64,000 bases of DNA from NCBI GenBank assembly GCA_965644315.1, contig CBFFRQ010000018.1, positions 372,001 to 436,000 on the forward strand, read 5' to 3'. The first letter of the stretch is position 1; each line of letters begins with the position of its first letter. A model generated the notes under the pieces. The model made no database searches. It worked only from the letters and a program-made list of their open reading frames with translations, and had not been told where the DNA came from. The translations under genes were made by a program, and so were the position numbers. Positions 5,086 to 12,687 of this stretch are shown piece by piece. The stretch is from Caecitellus pseudoparvulus (Eukaryota > Protista > Bigyra: Bicosoecida).

Positions 5086-7139
5086 ATGCGCGCCCTTTGT
5101 ACATTGCTGGCCTTGGCTGCGGCCACCGTCGCCTCTGGCTCTGCCGCGCTGAAGCTGCCCCTGCGCCGCCAACAGCATGACGTGAGCATGGCTGCGTACG
5201 CTCTGCCGTTGCGCTCTTTCTTCTCACGCACCTAATCTTTGCTTTCATAGGGTATCAAAATGGTGCCTAGACGACTGTTCGCGGAGGGCGCACCCATTTA
5301 CGGAGCATTCCGGGAGCTTGCGTGCGTCTGGCGTTTCATGCATGCAACGCGTACCTTCTGGCTCCAACACCGCAACGCCCCGTCGAGGCCCTCAGGTACT
5401 TCTACTCGGACGTGTGGGTCGGCACTCCACCCACCAAGTACTCCGTCATCACCGACACTGGTTCCACACTTATGGCTTTCCCGTGTGCGGACTGCCCCAA
5501 GTGTGGCAAGCACGAAGGGGGCAGGTACGACGGCACCAAGAGCAGCACTGCCAAGAAGGTCGGCTGCGGGTCTGGCTGCCCGGGTTCCTGTGACAACAGC
5601 CGCAGGCAGTGCTCCTACAGCCAGTCGTACACGGAGGGGTCGTCGCTGCGTGGCGTGTTCTGGGAGGACCAAGTCTGGGTGGGGGCCAAGGTCTCCCAGC
5701 CGGCAGAGGGCGAGTCAGGCAAGTACGGCATAAACTTCAAGTTTGGCTGCCACACGTACGAGAACGGGCTGTTCACAAGCCAGCTGGCCGACGGCATCAT
5801 GGGACTGGGCCGGGACGGCAAGAGCATCATTGCCGCTCTGCGCTCCTCTCAGCGCCTCGACAAACAGCTCTTTGGCATGTGCCTGTCCCTGAACGGGGGT
5901 GCCCTCACCCTGGGAGACATTGACACGTCGCTGCACACTGGGGAACTCAAGTGGCAGGCCTTCACGGGGCGGACCGGCTTCTACACCGTCGCCACCGGCG
6001 CTCTGCGGGTGGGCAACAACGTCGTCAAGTCCTCCGCCGCCACTGCCATCGTGGACAGCGGCACCTCTTTCACGTACCTGCCCGGGGCACACTATGCTGC
6101 ATTCATGGCTGCCATCAAGCCTGCAGCGGCCAGTGTCCCTGGCGCCACGCTCGCCACTGTGCGGGGCGAGGACCTGTGCTACCGCTTGTCCGACCCCGCC
6201 AAGCAGCTGCCCCAATTCCCCTCCATGGACCTGGCGGTCGGGGCCCTGACTTTCCACGTCCGCCCCGAGCACCTGTTCTTCAACATGGTGTGGGATGGCG
6301 ACAACGTCTTCTGCCTGGGGGTGTACAACAACGGCGGCTCCTCCGGCGTCATCGGTGCCAACGCCATGATGGGCTACGATGTCATCTTTGACCTGGAGCA
6401 GAACCGCCTGGGGCTGGCCCCTGCCACTTGCACCCAGCCGGCAGCAGCCCACGATTTGGGGGAGAAAGCTGCCGCATCCCCCGCGGCGCAGCCTTCAGGG
6501 GAGCCCACTGTGAGTCCTGCCCCTGCTGCTGCGTCGCCCTCCGCTGCTGCACCAGCGTCTTCCACGTCAGCTGCTTCAGCGTCACCAACCCACGTGCCCG
6601 CTGAGTCCCCCTCCCAACCTGCCCAGGCGGCACCTTCCCCTGCAGCTGGGGCTGCCTCCCCCACTGCCACCACCTCACCTGCTGCACAGGGCGAAGTGGG
6701 CGAGAGCCAGACAGGAGGCACCAGTGTGCCCACTGACCTGCACTGGCAAACTCAGGAGCCCAGCTCTGTGTTTGGCGCAGGCTTCGCGGCTGGCTTTGCT
6801 GTGCTGCTGGCCATTGGCTTGACAGCCCTCGGCTGCGTGAACTGCCGTCGCTCGTACTGCTCGTGCGGGGGCCTGGTGCTGCTCAGCACCAGCAGTCAGT
6901 TGTGGGTCAGCATGGTGGACGCCCAAGCTCGCGGTGCGGTCGCGTCAGCCACCACAGCCACAGGCTCCAAGTTCACGGACCGGGAAGGGGAGGACAGCAA
7001 ACCCTCGGCCGCCCCGGCAGCTTCCATCAACACACCCCAGACTGGCACCTTAGATGCAGACGTTGAGGCTCAGGTGTCTCTGGCACAAGCTGCAGCAGAC
7101 TCACATCCAGCAGATGCGGACGTGTTTGACAGCGAGTGA
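5086..7139 (+). CDS. Membrane-anchored A1 aspartic protease, plasmepsin V/ASP5-like; introns 5182-5250, 5322-5395
   Basis: Signal peptide MRALCTLLALAAATVA. Catalytic DTGS followed by MAFPCADCPKCGKH (nepenthesin-type insert). Second motif VDSGTSFTYLP. Pro/Ser/Ala stalk and a C-terminal TM helix. Confidence 0.85.
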
Positions 7140-7328
7140 GGCGCCCCTCGCCGCCTCAGTGCCCAGCGCAGCTCAGCTCAATGCACACTTTCTCGACTTG
7201 CATGGCACTGCCCAACCAACGGCAGAGAGCTGGGGTGCCTAGCAGGAAACGTCACTCGTCCTGCTCACCGCTGTGCTGTCGCAAGCAGTGGTTGTGGTTG
7301 GTCGCTGCGGCAGTGCTGTGTCGTCAAC

Positions 7329-10300
7329 ATGGGTGCCGCCAAGGCTTACGAGTCCAAGTCGCGGTTCAGCCGCATGTGGCAAGATAGGTGCGACTGATCC
7401 ACTCAACCTGGCCAGCCCCGCCTGCCCCTTTTTAACGAAATGACGCCGCTGCGCCCGCTGCAGACGCGTTCAGCTTGTCATTGCTGGGCTGAGTGTCATC
7501 ATGCTGGTGTGGGGCGTCACTGGCGGCAAGGGCAAAGGCCTGCGCTCCATCGTGGAAAGTGCAGTGGTGGACACGGACTTGCCTGTCATTGACGAGGTCT
7601 TCCAGCCCACGCCAGGCCCGCTGAACACTCCCCACGGCGGGAAGCTGGTGAACCTGGTGGTGGAGGGGGACGAAGCCAAGGCTGCCGTGCGTGGCATGGG
7701 CTGCCCCCTGCCGGGTCTCGTATGCGTGTAGCGTCACCTGCTCCCCACCTGGCTTTTATCGCAGTTGCTGACGTCTGCCCAGGACCTGCCGTCGTGGACT
7801 CTGACTTTGCGCCAGCAGTGCGATATTGAGCTGCTGATGAGCGGTGGCTTCTCACCCATTGACCAGTTCATGGACAAGGCAACCTATGACAGCGTGGTGA
7901 AGGACATGCACTTGGGGTCCAAGTATGATGACGCGGTGTGGCCCATGCCCATCACGCTGGACGTCACTTCCGAGGTGAGGCAGGCACTCTGCGGATTTTG
8001 AGCAAACGCCTGCAGGTGTTTAGCGAGCCCCCAACCGCGCGACAGCGCCTGCAAGCATGAGCCTGCTGGGCATGGGCCCTTTCTTACTTGTTGCTGCTGT
8101 CCGCCCTCACCCTTGGCTGGCACACCTATCACGCTGCACGGCAGCGGCTCCACGTGGCAACAAGCATGCCGCCTTCTGGCTTGTGCGGCGCCGCGTGTCA
8201 CCCCGTGCCTCCCCTCGCTTCCCAGTTTGGCAACACACTCAAACCTGGAGCAAAGATCGCCCTGCGTGACGAATTCTTCAACCTCATCGCCATCATGACC
8301 GTGCAGGAGACCTGGGTGCCCGACAAGGCCGTGGAAGCGCAGGGCGTCTTCCGCACGACAGACCAGAGCCACCCTGGCGTGGACTACCTCATGAACATGG
8401 CTGGGCCTGTGTACGTCTCGGGTTCCCTGCAAGGGGTGCAGCTGCCCCTGCACTATGACTTCCTGGACCTGCGCCGCACCCCGACAGAGCTGCGCAGCCA
8501 TGTCAAGGGTCTGGGCTGGAGCAACTTCCTCGCCTTCCAGACTCGCAACCCCATGCACCGCGCGCACATTGAGCTGACTCGCCTGGCAGCGGAACAGACC
8601 AACCTCGGCGTGGTCATCCACCCTGTCGTCGGCATGACCAAGCCTGGTGACGTCTCATACCATGTCCGGGTGCTTTGCTACAAGACCATGATCGCAACAC
8701 ACAAGTACTACAAGCGCAAGGGGGTGGTGCTGTCCCTGCTCCCCCTCGCCATGCGCATGGCAGGCCCCCGAGAGGCCCTGTGGCATGCTCTCATCCGCAA
8801 GAACCACGGCGCGTCCCACTTCATCGTGGGGCGCGACCACGCTGGCTGCAAAAACGCCGCTGGGGAGGACTTCTACGGCGCCTACGACGCGCAGGAACTG
8901 GTGGCGTCCGTCAACGACAAGATCGGCATCACCATTGTGCCCTTCCAGAAGGTGGTCTTCGTGCCGTCCCTGCAGAAGTACCTGCCGCAGGACAAGGTGC
9001 CGCCCAACACAGAGACTATCTCCATCTCTGGCACCAAGTTCCGCGCCATGATGGCTGCTGGCTCCGCCATCCCTGCCTGGTTCTCCGAGCCCAAGGTCAT
9101 CAAGATTCTGCAGACAGTGGCGCCGCCCCGCCCTCGCCGTGGCTTCGCCATCTTCTTCACGGGGCTGTCGGGCGGCGGCAAGACCACCATCTCCCACGCG
9201 CTCATCTCCCGCCTCCGGGAGCTGGTGCCCACCCGCCACCTGACCATCCTGGACGGAGACGTCGCACGCACACACCTGAGCAAGGAGCTGGGTTTCTCCG
9301 TCGCTGACCGCAACACCAACGTTGCGCGCATGGGGTATGTTGCTTCGGAGGTGGTGCGCCACGGTGGCATCGCCATTGCCAGCACAATTTCCCCCTTCGA
9401 GAAGGCGCGCGCTGAGAGCCGTGCCCTGGTGCAGGCGGCAGGTGGGGCCTTTGTCTTGGTGCACGTCTCCACGTCTGTCCGCGTTTGCGCTCAGCGCGAC
9501 GTGAAGGGGCTGTATGCAAAGGCGGACGCGGGCAAGCTGCCGCTCACTGGCGTTGCGCACCCATACGAATTGCCGGACTCGCCAGACCTTGTCATCAATG
9601 CGGACGTGGTTGAGGTGGACAAGTCAGTGCGTGCCATCCTGCGCTGGCTGAACGAGAACGAGTACTTGGAGGACGCCACAGTGGGCAGCGACGTGACCCA
9701 CTTTGACCTGCAGGCACTGGGCCTGAGCACCACAGGTGTCGTGGACGTCTCTGCACGCCAGTGCAACTTGCTGCCAGCCGGCACCGCTGGCAGCAAGCTG
9801 CCTCGACTGGTGGTGGTGGTGGCCCCCACGGCCTCCCGTGTCTCAGCCATCACTGACGAAGCATACCGTGGTGCAATTGCGGGGGACTACGCCGCCGAGT
9901 GGATGGGTGTCATGGACATGTGGGGGGCCAAGCACCCTGGTGACTCCAAGGCAGCCCTGCGCATGACCTTGACGAGTGAGAACGTCGACGACGCGGCGTC
10001 CTCTGTGCTGAGTGCCAGGGGCGTGAAGCCTGAGGATGGCGCCAGCGTCCACCAGTTGGTGGTGGAGGATGACCGCACCGAAGTTGCGTGGGGCCTGTGG
10101 ACTGCCGTGCGCACGTCAGCTGCCACGACGGCCGGCGTGGAGAAGTCTGTCTTGGAGAGCAACCTTGTGCAGCGTGTGAGCGAGATCCCAGGTGCGCCTG
10201 AGCACGTCTTGGTGTCGGCACCGGCTGAGGCGCTGCAGTACCTGCCAAACTTCTTGCGCATGGACCCTTGCGCCAGCGCCATTATTTTGGCTGATGATAG

Positions 10301-10481
10301 TGGTGAGGCACCCAAAGGCATGTCCAGCTCTGCATGGAGCCAGTACGTATCTGCTGCCCAGAAGCTGCGCTCCACCTTCATCACACGGGTGTCTTTGCTG
10401 GATGCCAAGGGTAAGCAGGCACAGAGCCAGAACCCCCACGCAGCTGATGCAGAGCAGCTCTTGGCTGGCCATGCAGCCTAG
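7329..10481 (+). CDS. Bifunctional ATP sulfurylase-APS kinase (Sat/MET3 domain order) with N-terminal membrane anchor and extra C-terminal domain; introns 7388-7463, 7687-7764, 7975-8225
   Basis: PHGGKLVNL, DIELLMSGGFSP, WPMPITLDV, AFQTRNPMHRAH, MRMAGPREALWHALIRKNHGASHFIVGRDHAG (ATPS). FFTGLSGGGKTT, LDGD, RDVKGLY, PYELP (APSK). Splice junctions checked for frame. Confidence 0.93.
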
Positions 10482-10584
10482 GTAGCCACAATCCATACCC
10501 CACCAGAGCTCTGTATGTGAGTTTTCATCCCAGACAGCATTGATTGCCTGGTCTCGTGATGAGCTGGAAGGGAGGGCAGTGTGC

Positions 10585-12687
10585 ATGGCGGGGCAGGCAA
10601 GTGATTTCCGCATCCAGGCTGGGGCAAGCACCTGCTCTCTTCACCGAGCCCTGGAGGTGATCCTTGCAAATCGCTGGATTTCATGGCTTGATACATGCTC
10701 TTTGCGTGCGGCAAGCTCGGAAACATGCGCTGTCGCGTGCAGGTCGATCCGGAAGCTGGCGTTTCGCCCTCCACTGCCCTGCGCCGCTGGCCCGGCCCAT
10801 GCCCCTCCAACGAGACCGCTACCATCCCTGGCCCCAGCGCTGCTGGAGTATGTTGTGGACTTGAGACATGCACGTGAAGTGCTGCTCTTGGGTGACATTT
10901 CACGCGGTGCCTATCTGCTTGCCAGCCACCTCAAGCACCTACCACACAGCACGACAAGCCTCAGGTGCTCAGCACTTGCTTGTGCCATTCCCCACGAGCA
11001 CCACCCGGGAGGGTTCGTGCAAGCTGCGATACACTGCGCTGGGGACTTTAAGCTGCCAAGCAGCTTGGAGAGCCTGGAGCTGCTGAGGCCCCGCCAAGCT
11101 CGAAGTGTGGATGGCACAGACATCGCAGCGGCACTGCTACGATCAGACCTTCCCAGCCTCCGCTCCTTGGCCCTCCCCGGCTGGGACCTCTGGGGGAGTG
11201 AGGCAGCAGATCAAGCCTTTTCACAAGCGCTGGGGTCCTTCTCGGCACTGCAGACCCTCACCATTGGTTGCAGAGGAGGGGAAGCTGGTCGGGCCGACAG
11301 AGTGGCCTGCAGCATTGCAGCTGCACACAGCCTCACACAGCTGCGACAGCTTCAGCTGGTAGATGTACATGTACAGTGTTCGGGTTTGCCTGCCGCTAGC
11401 GAAGCGCCATTGGAGTCCCTGTGCCTTGACGGGGTGCGCCTGTGCTGTGACGCGCAAGCAGATGTGAACGGCCTGGCAGCCTGGCTGGCTGCGTGTCCGT
11501 TGCGGACGCTAAGCCTGAGCCATGTCAACGTGGGAACAGTGGCCTCCCCTGCCATTGCCACAGCCCTGCACGCCCTCGCACCCACTTTAGTGGAGCTGAG
11601 GCTTGACTGTTGCTACCTCCCTGCGGCTGCTGTGCGTGGCCAGCTCGGCATTGCCCTCGCAGCGTGCAGAGGACTATCGAGCGTATCTCTGCAGGCGCTT
11701 CCCAGTGATGGAGACGTGCTCTTCCCAGTCATCAAGCGCCTGCCCCTTTTGCTCTCATTGGACTTGAGTCACAGCCCTAGCCTGCTGCGGGGCACAAAAG
11801 CGGCACGCTTCTGCCGCTGCGTTGCACCCCACGCGGCAGCGCTTCACACACTTCGACTCGCTGGCTGCGGGATGAGCACACAAGGCATGCAAGTCCTTTC
11901 TTTGGCCCTCTCGCAAGGGCCCACATTAAGCTTGTCTTGCCTTGACTTGCGGAGCAACGCCATTGGCAGTGACGACGGCGCGACGGCCCTGATGCACCTG
12001 CTGGCACGGAGCAGCGCTTGGAGTGAGGTGTCTGTCGAGGCCTGTGGACTGCAACCGGTGGGGGTCACCAAGGCCTGCTTAGGTTTGGTCGCAGGGGGCT
12101 GCAACGCGCTGGGGTGCCTCCGCCTCGGCAGCAACCCACCCGCTTCAGCCTTCTCACAGCACTTGGCGAATCCTCACATGGATGCAGGTGCGGAAGCCCT
12201 TGCCAGTGCATTTGAAGATGCAGAAATAGGGGCCAGCGAAGTGGTGGAGCAAGCGCGAGCGAGTGACCTCTTTCACCTTGATGTTGGTCCAGAAGGAGTG
12301 TGCAGTGCAGCCCTCGCTGCTGTATGTGCTGCGGCACCCAAGCTGACCAGCTTGCATATCGGGCACAATCACGCTCCTGCACCGATGGTCTCGTGTGTGA
12401 TGGCCGCACTGGAGGCCTCTGGTGCGGCGCAGCACCTGAGCTGTCTCGATTTGGACGAGTGTGACGTGCGCGACGAGCATCTGCAGGGCATGCTGCCTAC
12501 AGATGCTTCTGGAGCATGGCACAGCCTGCAGCGCCTGCATATTCGCGGCTGCAGTGGCACGTCGTCCGATAGCATCTTGGCGCTGAGTAGGGCGCTGCCC
12601 TCCGTCACAGTGGAGACGAACAAGGTGTCAAAAGAGCGCCTTGCCGCAGTTGCACTGTGTGACGCCCCTACGGGAGAGCTCGGCTAA
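10585..12687 (+). CDS. RNI-like leucine-rich repeat protein with a possible N-terminal F-box-like segment
   Basis: Repeated LxxLxLxxN/C motifs (LRTLSLSHV, LVELRLDCC, LSCLDLRSNAIG, LTSLHIGHN, LQRLHIRGC) in a 700-aa ORF. Confidence 0.75.
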   Translation: MAGQASDFRIQAGASTCSLHRALEVILANRWISWLDTCSLRAASSETCAVACRSIRKLAFRPPLPCAAGPAHAPPTRPLPSLAPALLEYVVDLRHAREVLLLGDISRGAYLLASHLKHLPHSTTSLRCSALACAIPHEHHPGGFVQAAIHCAGDFKLPSSLESLELLRPRQARSVDGTDIAAALLRSDLPSLRSLALPGWDLWGSEAADQAFSQALGSFSALQTLTIGCRGGEAGRADRVACSIAAAHSLTQLRQLQLVDVHVQCSGLPAASEAPLESLCLDGVRLCCDAQADVNGLAAWLAACPLRTLSLSHVNVGTVASPAIATALHALAPTLVELRLDCCYLPAAAVRGQLGIALAACRGLSSVSLQALPSDGDVLFPVIKRLPLLLSLDLSHSPSLLRGTKAARFCRCVAPHAAALHTLRLAGCGMSTQGMQVLSLALSQGPTLSLSCLDLRSNAIGSDDGATALMHLLARSSAWSEVSVEACGLQPVGVTKACLGLVAGGCNALGCLRLGSNPPASAFSQHLANPHMDAGAEALASAFEDAEIGASEVVEQARASDLFHLDVGPEGVCSAALAAVCAAAPKLTSLHIGHNHAPAPMVSCVMAALEASGAAQHLSCLDLDECDVRDEHLQGMLPTDASGAWHSLQRLHIRGCSGTSSDSILALSRALPSVTVETNKVSKERLAAVALCDAPTGELG

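What the first reader, a model, noticed from the sequence alone, without database searches (positions are those of the whole stretch)
7329..10481. Membrane-anchored PAPS synthase (ATPS-APSK) with a Golgi-enzyme-like architecture: candidate secretory-pathway sulfation module
Seen: splicing intron 7388-7463 joins a hidden first exon, absent from the ORF track, to give MGAAKAYESKSRFSRMWQDRR-VQLVIAGLSVIMLVWGVTG-stem-PHGGKLVNL. That is a 21-aa basic tail, a short hydrophobic helix and a stem of about 35 aa, followed by ATP sulfurylase, APS kinase with an intact P-loop (GLSGGGKT), and about 250 extra residues. Established: short tail + short TM + stem is the type II layout of Golgi glycosyl- and sulfotransferases. 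Characterised PAPS synthases are soluble (cytosol, nucleus, plastid, mitosome), and PAPS normally enters the Golgi through PAPST/SLC35B transporters. Inference: this enzyme may make PAPS in the lumen, or while tethered to a membrane, to feed glycan or protein sulfation directly. I do not know of a description of this arrangement. Topology is ambiguous because basic residues flank both sides of the helix.
Basis: partly seen in the sequence, partly recalled or inferred. Interest (0 to 1): 0.85.

Follow-up and report, generated by a model that had tools for sequence, protein, structure and literature searches.

The report
Golgi-anchored PAPS synthase in marine flagellates
This marine flagellate's only enzyme for making the cell's sulfate donor (PAPS) is built like a Golgi membrane enzyme and probably works inside the secretory pathway, not in the cytosol; the layout is conserved in Cafeteria and other protists, and I found no description of it.

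Summary
Real and conserved. RNA-type (spliced) contigs confirm all three introns and start upstream of the ATG. The 915-aa protein has a 21-aa basic tail, an 18-aa transmembrane helix, a 36-aa stem, ATP sulfurylase and APS kinase with intact motifs, and a ~270-aa tail. It is the genome's only ATPS and APSK. Orthologues form one clade (SH-aLRT 99, includes Cafeteria), and all 19 whose N-terminus I read carry the anchor. Indirect evidence for a lumenal enzyme: type II charge bias; strong loss of N-glycosylation sequons (2.6% vs 13.8% in bacterial homologues); two invariant cysteines. The genome has type II-anchored sulfotransferases, a gPAPP-like phosphatase, an anchored pyrophosphatase and an SLC35B1-like ATP importer, but no detectable PAPS transporter or sulfate reduction. 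The tail has a P-loop/sulfotransferase fold without catalytic motifs, probably a pseudo-sulfotransferase; another note on this same stretch guessed that too. Best model (0.72): PAPS is made in the Golgi/secretory lumen, bypassing PAPST. Location is inferred, not shown. No paper found; the scan had not reported it on other DNA.

The parts
7205..7328 (+). 5' UTR (transcript contigs start at 7205-7232; the upstream gene's contigs end at 7196-7197)
7329..7387 (+). Exon 1 (coding): start codon and basic cytosolic tail, aa 1-20
   Evidence: conserved in L022
7388..7463 (+). Intron 1, GT..AG, 76 nt
   Evidence: skipped in X3, X16, X18
7468..7521 (+). Type II signal-anchor helix, aa 22-39
   Evidence: helix 24-43 in the AF2 model of orthologue P0004
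7522..7629 (+). Stem, aa 40-75, predicted disordered
   Evidence: pLDDT<50 at 44-74 in P0004
7630..7686 (+). Start of the PUA-like domain (PHGG), end of exon 2
7687..7764 (+). Intron 2, GT..AG, 78 nt
7765..7974 (+). Exon 3, PUA_2 domain
7975..8225 (+). Intron 3, GT..AG, 251 nt
8469..9113 (+). ATP sulfurylase catalytic domain (QTRNP, HRAH, GRDHAG intact)
9138..9599 (+). APS kinase domain; P-loop at 9162-9185; DGD..R, R..N..R, ISP and RD.KGLY motifs intact
9657..10481 (+). C-terminal P-loop/sulfotransferase-fold domain without PSB or 3'-PB motifs; invariant Cys677 (9762) and Cys846 (10269); stop at 10479-10481

Best explanation
A bacterial/fungal-type ATPS-APSK bifunctional enzyme was recruited to the secretory pathway as a type II membrane protein. 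SHOWN: transcribed, spliced gene; single conserved N-terminal anchor and stem; intact ATPS and APSK motifs; sole copy in the genome. INFERRED: the tail stays cytosolic and the enzyme faces the ER/Golgi lumen. There it converts ATP (imported by the SLC35B1-like carrier) and sulfate (import route unknown; five SLC26 genes exist) to APS and then PAPS. A second type II protein, an anchored inorganic pyrophosphatase, removes PPi and pulls the unfavourable ATPS step. PAPS goes to type II sulfotransferases, and a gPAPP-like phosphatase clears PAP. This makes the PAPS transporters SLC35B2/B3 unnecessary, and none was found. The C-terminal domain is most likely a catalytically dead, disulfide-stabilised sulfotransferase-derived module used for packing, oligomerisation or docking to active sulfotransferases (inferred; about 0.6 by itself).
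For: Splicing and 5' end. Sole ATPS and APSK. Monophyletic family of 28 rows, SH-aLRT 99. Anchor in all 17 distinct full-length proteins plus upstream TM exons in L021 and L022. C-minus-N charge <0 in 17/18 rows and 0 in one; N-tails of 9-68 aa, all net basic. Sequons: 4 of 156 variable Asn in the family core vs 13.8% in 97 soluble, mostly bacterial homologues; 0/500 subsamples as low; Q/D/H-x-S/T controls normal at 9-13%. Other proteins of this genome are not depleted, and STT3 is present. Sequon loss on recruitment to the lumen is a published signature (PMC5562741). One subclade is instead sequon-enriched (18 vs 9.6). Two Cys are invariant in 22/22 tails. Type II sulfotransferases L011 and L012; type II PAP-phosphatase L032; type II PPase L026, with anchored orthologues L035 and L054. 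UAA family holds only a B1-like and a B4-like member. No sulfite reductase, and the PAPS_reduct hit is FAD synthase. Sister-group proteins carry TM+PPase (P0138) or a short signal-peptide-like N-terminus (P0163, P0170, P0184).
Against: No localisation or activity data. No DeepTMHMM or SignalP was available; topology rests on hydropathy and charge, and in this protein the margin is small (+3 vs +2). PAPST absence rests on an exon-wise Pfam search of one assembly with no positive control, and the B4 call for L003 rests partly on motifs recalled from memory. One sulfotransferase (L010) shows no anchor and may be a cytosolic PAPS user. No lumenal sulfate importer was identified. The disulfide was not measured because model coordinates are not returned. 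Tail-to-sulfotransferase homology is only suggestive (Z 7.1-7.3, tied with NMP kinases; HHalign E 0.056). Family members are related, so the sequon counts are not fully independent.
Confidence: 0.72

Rival explanations
1. Reverse signal-anchor: the enzyme is tethered to the cytosolic face of ER/Golgi (P450-like) or of mitochondria, makes PAPS in the cytosol, and an unrecognised carrier imports it.
For: Basic residues also follow the helix (GKGKGLR). ATP and sulfate are plentiful in the cytosol. L010 looks like an unanchored sulfotransferase. Many uncharacterised DMT carriers exist.
Against: Tails of 9-68 aa are net basic and the charge bias points to N-in in 17/18 rows. Sequon depletion and the invariant Cys pair have no cytosolic explanation. 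An anchored PPase is redundant beside the soluble one (L028/L029). Sister proteins have signal-peptide-like starts.
Confidence: 0.13
2. Lumenal topology, but the protein works beyond the Golgi (endosome, food vacuole or cell surface) and uses sulfate taken in with seawater.
For: Same topology evidence; no lumenal sulfate importer identified; the organism is a marine phagotroph (inferred).
Against: Short 15-21 aa helices in most members are Golgi-like (rule from my own knowledge). Partner enzymes are of Golgi type. An ATP supply in those compartments is unlikely.
Confidence: 0.07
3. The C-terminal domain is an active, divergent sulfotransferase, so one polypeptide activates sulfate and transfers it.
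For: Fold matches TPST/Sulfotransfer_3. It keeps nearly invariant Arg and Asp residues. An unrelated fusion of sulfotransferase + ATPS + APSK + PAP phosphatase exists (P0152).
Against: The PSB loop (G.[PK][RK]SGTT) and the 3'-phosphate R...S motif are absent and not conserved in 22 sequences. Mean column identity is only 22%, against a strongly conserved core.
Confidence: 0.07
4. The N-terminus is an organelle import signal (mitochondrion or cryptic plastid), as for Euglena or Entamoeba sulfate activation.
For: Basic, Ser-containing tail; organellar sulfate activation is known (PMC2275785, PMC7465240).
Against: A true hydrophobic helix plus a long P/S/A stem is conserved, which is not a presequence pattern. 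There is no sulfate reduction to feed. Sequon depletion is not expected for mitochondrial import.
Confidence: 0.04

Closest known systems
Bacterial Sat-CysC bifunctional ATPS-APSK (Aquifex/Rhodobacter type) and fungal MET3; same clade as Dictyostelium and Toxoplasma ATPS in Patron et al. 2008 (PMC2275785)
   Same: Domain order PUA-ATPS-APSK, 50-54% identity to bacterial proteins, catalytic motifs.
   Different: N-terminal type II anchor and stem; extra ~270-aa domain; sequon depletion. The APSK P-loop is intact, whereas the fungal domain is regulatory.
Animal PAPSS1/2 with PAPST1/2 (SLC35B2/B3)
   Same: One polypeptide makes PAPS, for sulfation only.
   Different: PAPSS is soluble, APSK-first and from another ATPS lineage, and needs Golgi import by PAPST (PMC6709370). 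Here the order is reversed, the enzyme is anchored, and no PAPST is seen.
Golgi type II enzymes: TPST/Sulfotransfer_3 sulfotransferases and gPAPP (BPNT2/IMPAD1)
   Same: Tail-TM-stem layout; the C-terminal domain shares the TPST-like fold; gPAPP is the precedent for lumenal PAP metabolism (own knowledge).
   Different: These use or clear PAPS/PAP; none makes PAPS. The C-terminal domain lacks their catalytic motifs.
Organellar sulfate activation (Entamoeba mitosome, Euglena mitochondrion, plastids); ATPS-PPase fusions of diatoms, oomycetes and haptophytes
   Same: Relocated sulfate activation; coupling to a pyrophosphatase.
   Different: Those are soluble matrix or stromal enzymes. Patron et al. 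do not mention Golgi or transmembrane forms.

Membership tests
Bifunctional ATPS-APSK (Sat-CysC type PAPS synthase) | PUA_2 + ATP-sulfurylase domain with QTRNP, HxxH, GRDHAG | tested here: met
Bifunctional ATPS-APSK (Sat-CysC type PAPS synthase) | APSK with intact P-loop and APS-binding motifs | tested here: met
   the FTG phenylalanine is L/M/V/I in most family members
Bifunctional ATPS-APSK (Sat-CysC type PAPS synthase) | PAPS formation from ATP and sulfate | not testable with these tools
   needs an assay
Golgi type II membrane enzyme | Single N-terminal 15-22 aa TM after a short basic tail, followed by a low-complexity stem | tested here: met
Golgi type II membrane enzyme | N-cytosol/C-lumen orientation | tested here: inconclusive
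   indirect support only: charge bias, sequon selection, Cys pair
Golgi type II membrane enzyme | Golgi residence | not testable with these tools
   needs imaging or fractionation
Sulfotransferase (PF13469/TPST) - C-terminal domain | P-loop-type alpha/beta fold with five parallel strands | tested here: met
   AF2 pLDDT 81; TPST Z 7.1-7.3, tied with NMP kinases; most Atlas top rows are Sulfotransfer_3, TM 0.43-0.48
Sulfotransferase (PF13469/TPST) - C-terminal domain | Sequence-profile homology | tested here: inconclusive
   no Pfam hit; HHalign score 20.4 over 91 columns, E 0.056, shuffles 11.6+/-1.9, max 17.6
Sulfotransferase (PF13469/TPST) - C-terminal domain | 5'-PSB loop (G.PRSGTT-like) and 3'-PB Arg/Ser motif | tested here: not met
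   so not filed as a sulfotransferase
Assimilatory sulfate reduction pathway | APS/PAPS reductase and sulfite reductase in the genome | tested here: not met

The most novel reading that the evidence does not exclude
Bicosoecids and related protists run a complete, PAPS-transporter-independent sulfation system inside the secretory lumen: anchored ATPS-APSK (with a sulfotransferase-derived docking domain), anchored pyrophosphatase, Golgi sulfotransferases and gPAPP, with SLC35B2/B3 lost. Secretory targeting may extend to a sister group of signal-peptide or TM ATPS-APSK-PPase proteins in other protists.
Probability: 0.55. Interest if true: 0.87.

Novelty: new variant of a known kind. Interest (0 to 1): 0.78.

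Why it matters
The textbook scheme has PAPS made in the cytosol, nucleus or an endosymbiotic organelle and carried into the Golgi by PAPST. A conserved protist clade that makes it in the lumen would be a new compartment for sulfate activation and a second solution to Golgi sulfation. It raises testable questions about how sulfate and ATP reach the lumen. It also gives a direct experiment: a Golgi-lumenal PAPS synthase should rescue sulfation in SLC35B2/B3- or PAPSS-deficient cells if lumenal sulfate and ATP suffice, which could be a glyco-engineering tool. Automatic gene callers miss the anchor exon, which may be why it was overlooked.

Tried and rejected
Artefact of gene prediction: rejected by spliced contigs and orthologues. 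The apparent hydrophobic N-terminus of database protein P0001 is intron 3 read through and is not used as evidence. Tail homologues: a single-sequence search found only itself; the profile search found no standalone relatives, no PDB sequence hit, no Pfam hit and no paralogue in the genome. The Atlas feature search was dominated by the neighbouring ATPS. Foldseek gave nothing at E<=0.001. Tail as a duplicated APSK: only a 16-column match, at about the shuffle maximum, so not supported. PF03567 and PF06990 searches were blank but their controls did not ring, so they are uninformative. I could not confirm from papers that TSA GECG01 is Halocafeteria. Most of my ten paper searches looked for a membrane-anchored or lumenal PAPS synthase and found none. 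The joined spliced protein was not sent to any search tool: searches used exon references or database orthologues, and the joined frame was built only inside scripts from window.fa.

Full report
Observation. Laying four public runs on 6900-10900 shows three GT..AG skips: 7388-7463 (X3, X16, X18), 7687-7764 (X3, X16, X18) and 7975-8225 (X16, X18, X11). X3 and X11 are on record as RNA; X16 and X18 have no library record but give spliced contigs. Contigs of this gene start at 7205-7232, and those of the upstream aspartyl protease end at 7196-7197, so the anchor exon is in the mRNA and 7329 is the first ATG. The protein is 915 aa: basic tail 1-21, one hydrophobic helix 22-39, stem 40-75, PUA-like domain, ATP sulfurylase, APS kinase, and a ~270-aa tail with no Pfam match. 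All ATPS and APSK motifs checked are intact.

Organism. The genome is a 30.6-Mb eukaryote assembly found in marine samples. The nearest named relative of the gene is Cafeteria roenbergensis KAA0156045. A closer one is a complete ORF from EukProt TSA GECG01, which I recall as Halocafeteria but could not verify. So this is probably a bicosoecid stramenopile (inference). A near-identical protein is filed as 'MET3, Symbiodinium sp. KB8', most likely contamination of that assembly.

The anchor defines a family. A search with exon 4 returned 18 long eukaryotic-type relatives ahead of about 8000 mostly ~575-aa bacterial Sat-CysC proteins, and the exhaustive search added more. On the ATPS-APSK core, 28 rows form one clade with SH-aLRT 99 (quick method). 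Every member with a complete N-terminus has tail, helix and a mostly Pro/Ser/Ala-rich stem of 21-126 aa (17 distinct proteins). For two of the truncated gene calls I read the DNA upstream and found the helix exon in both (L021, L022); L022 keeps exon 1 and the same intron position. The other truncated members were not checked. P0004 lies on a transcript-sized contig. Its AF2 model (pTM 0.81) shows helix 24-43, a disordered stem and three packed domains.

Which side? Four indirect lines point to the lumen. (1) The 15 residues before the helix are more positive than the 15 after in 17 of 18 rows and equal in one, and the tails are 9-68 aa and net basic. (2) N-x-S/T sequons are depleted: 4 of 156 variable Asn in the family core (2.6%) against 13.8% in 97 soluble, mostly bacterial homologues. 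None of 500 subsamples was as low, and Q/D/H-x-S/T are normal. Other proteins of this genome are at expectation (11 vs 13.4; 35 vs 33.9), and STT3 is present. Loss of sequons on recruitment to the secretory pathway is described in PMC5562741. One subclade is instead enriched (18 vs 9.6). (3) The tail has two cysteines invariant in 22/22 sequences, the only two in this protein's tail, which suggests a disulfide; this was not measured. (4) Sister-group proteins carry a TM plus PPase (P0138) or begin with a short hydrophobic, signal-peptide-like stretch directly before the enzyme (P0163, P0170, P0184).

Genome context. This is the only ATPS and the only APSK. There is no sulfite reductase and the PAPS_reduct hit is FAD synthase, so PAPS serves sulfation only. 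The UAA family has two strong members, an SLC35B1-like one (E 7e-32 to human SLC35B1) and an SLC35B4/YEA4-like one (plus motifs from memory). The weaker hits belong to other families. No PAPST1/2 was seen. Type II-anchored partners are present: two sulfotransferases with intact PSB loops (L011, L012), a PAP-phosphatase of gPAPP layout (L032) and an inorganic pyrophosphatase with a TM exon (L026). The two closest PPase relatives in metagenomes (63% and 54% identity) also have a TM stretch upstream (L035, L054). Soluble and mitochondrial-looking PPases exist separately. ATPS needs PPi hydrolysis (PMC2275785), so an anchored PPase fits a lumenal ATPS well. Five SLC26 genes exist, but their location is unknown. 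Against the model: sulfotransferase L010 has no evident anchor, and the PAPST search had no positive control.

The C-terminal domain. It folds confidently (pLDDT 81) into a five-stranded P-loop-type domain. VIA-align gives Z 7-7.8 with TPST1/2, tick TPST, NMP kinases and CTP synthase tied, and most top Atlas rows are Sulfotransfer_3 (TM under 0.5). HHalign places its conserved PRL..Y...LR.DPC and FP.RV motifs on the EKTP....LFP.AK and YEDL segments of Sulfotransfer_3 over 91 columns, score 20.4 against shuffles of 11.6+/-1.9, E 0.056. The PAPS-binding PSB loop and the R...S motif are gone. I read it as a probable pseudo-sulfotransferase and do not file it as a family member. I reached this reading before seeing note s1-661297, which makes the same guess on this stretch; it is not independent support.

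Mechanism and verdict. Most likely (0.72) the enzyme sits in the ER/Golgi membrane with both catalytic domains in the lumen. It makes PAPS from imported ATP and sulfate, helped by the anchored PPase, and supplies neighbouring sulfotransferases, removing the need for PAPST. Gene, anchor, conservation, motifs and gene inventory are shown; orientation, compartment, activity and the role of the tail are inferred. Rivals are a cytosol-facing tether (0.13), a post-Golgi site (0.07), an active C-terminal transferase (0.07) and organelle import (0.04). Paper searches found no description, and Patron et al. 2008 contain no 'Golgi' or 'transmembrane'; subscription literature was not searchable. The chemistry is known, while the architecture and probable compartment appear new: new variant of a known kind, interest 0.78.

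Noticed in passing
L026 2401-1435 (-), G000:C52: Family I inorganic pyrophosphatase with a type II anchor exon (67-nt intron, not RNA-checked); catalytic residues look intact; the closest relatives L035 and L054 are also anchored.
   Followed up: partly
L032 (-), G000:C68: gPAPP/BPNT2-like PAP phosphatase with a type II anchor in a stramenopile.
   Followed up: partly
P0138 (L020): TM + PPase + ATPS + APSK single polypeptide in the sister group.
   Followed up: partly
P0163 (L170, GCA_013115145.1), P0170 (L171), P0184 (L023): ATPS-APSK(-PPase) proteins that start with a short signal-peptide-like stretch and no transit peptide; I recall the P0163 assembly as Perkinsus chesapeaki (unverified).
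   Followed up: partly
P0152: Four-domain fusion sulfotransferase + ATPS + APSK + inositol-phosphatase-family (PAP phosphatase) domain, a whole sulfation cycle in one chain; origin unknown.
   Followed up: no
P0161: ATPS-APSK interrupted by a Hint/LAGLIDADG intein near the start of the APSK domain.
   Followed up: no
P0121, P0301: Both this organism's gene and a Cafeteria-type gene are deposited as Symbiodinium sp. KB8 MET3, which suggests bicosoecid contamination of that assembly.
   Followed up: no
window 7180-7197: AATGCA lies 11-12 nt before the 3' end of the upstream protease contigs, in line with the reported poly(A) signal; only about 8 nt separate the two transcripts.
   Followed up: partly
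L022 4067-8824: In the related species two long ORFs and a SET/Rubisco-LSMT-type gene follow the PAPS synthase in the same orientations as in the window (local synteny).
   Followed up: no
L010 1126-2556 (+): Sulfotransfer_3 protein with intact PSB loop and no evident anchor; possible cytosolic PAPS user.
   Followed up: partly
L040-L045, L057, L061, L029: EF-hand-fused soluble pyrophosphatases recur in many marine protist contigs.
   Followed up: no
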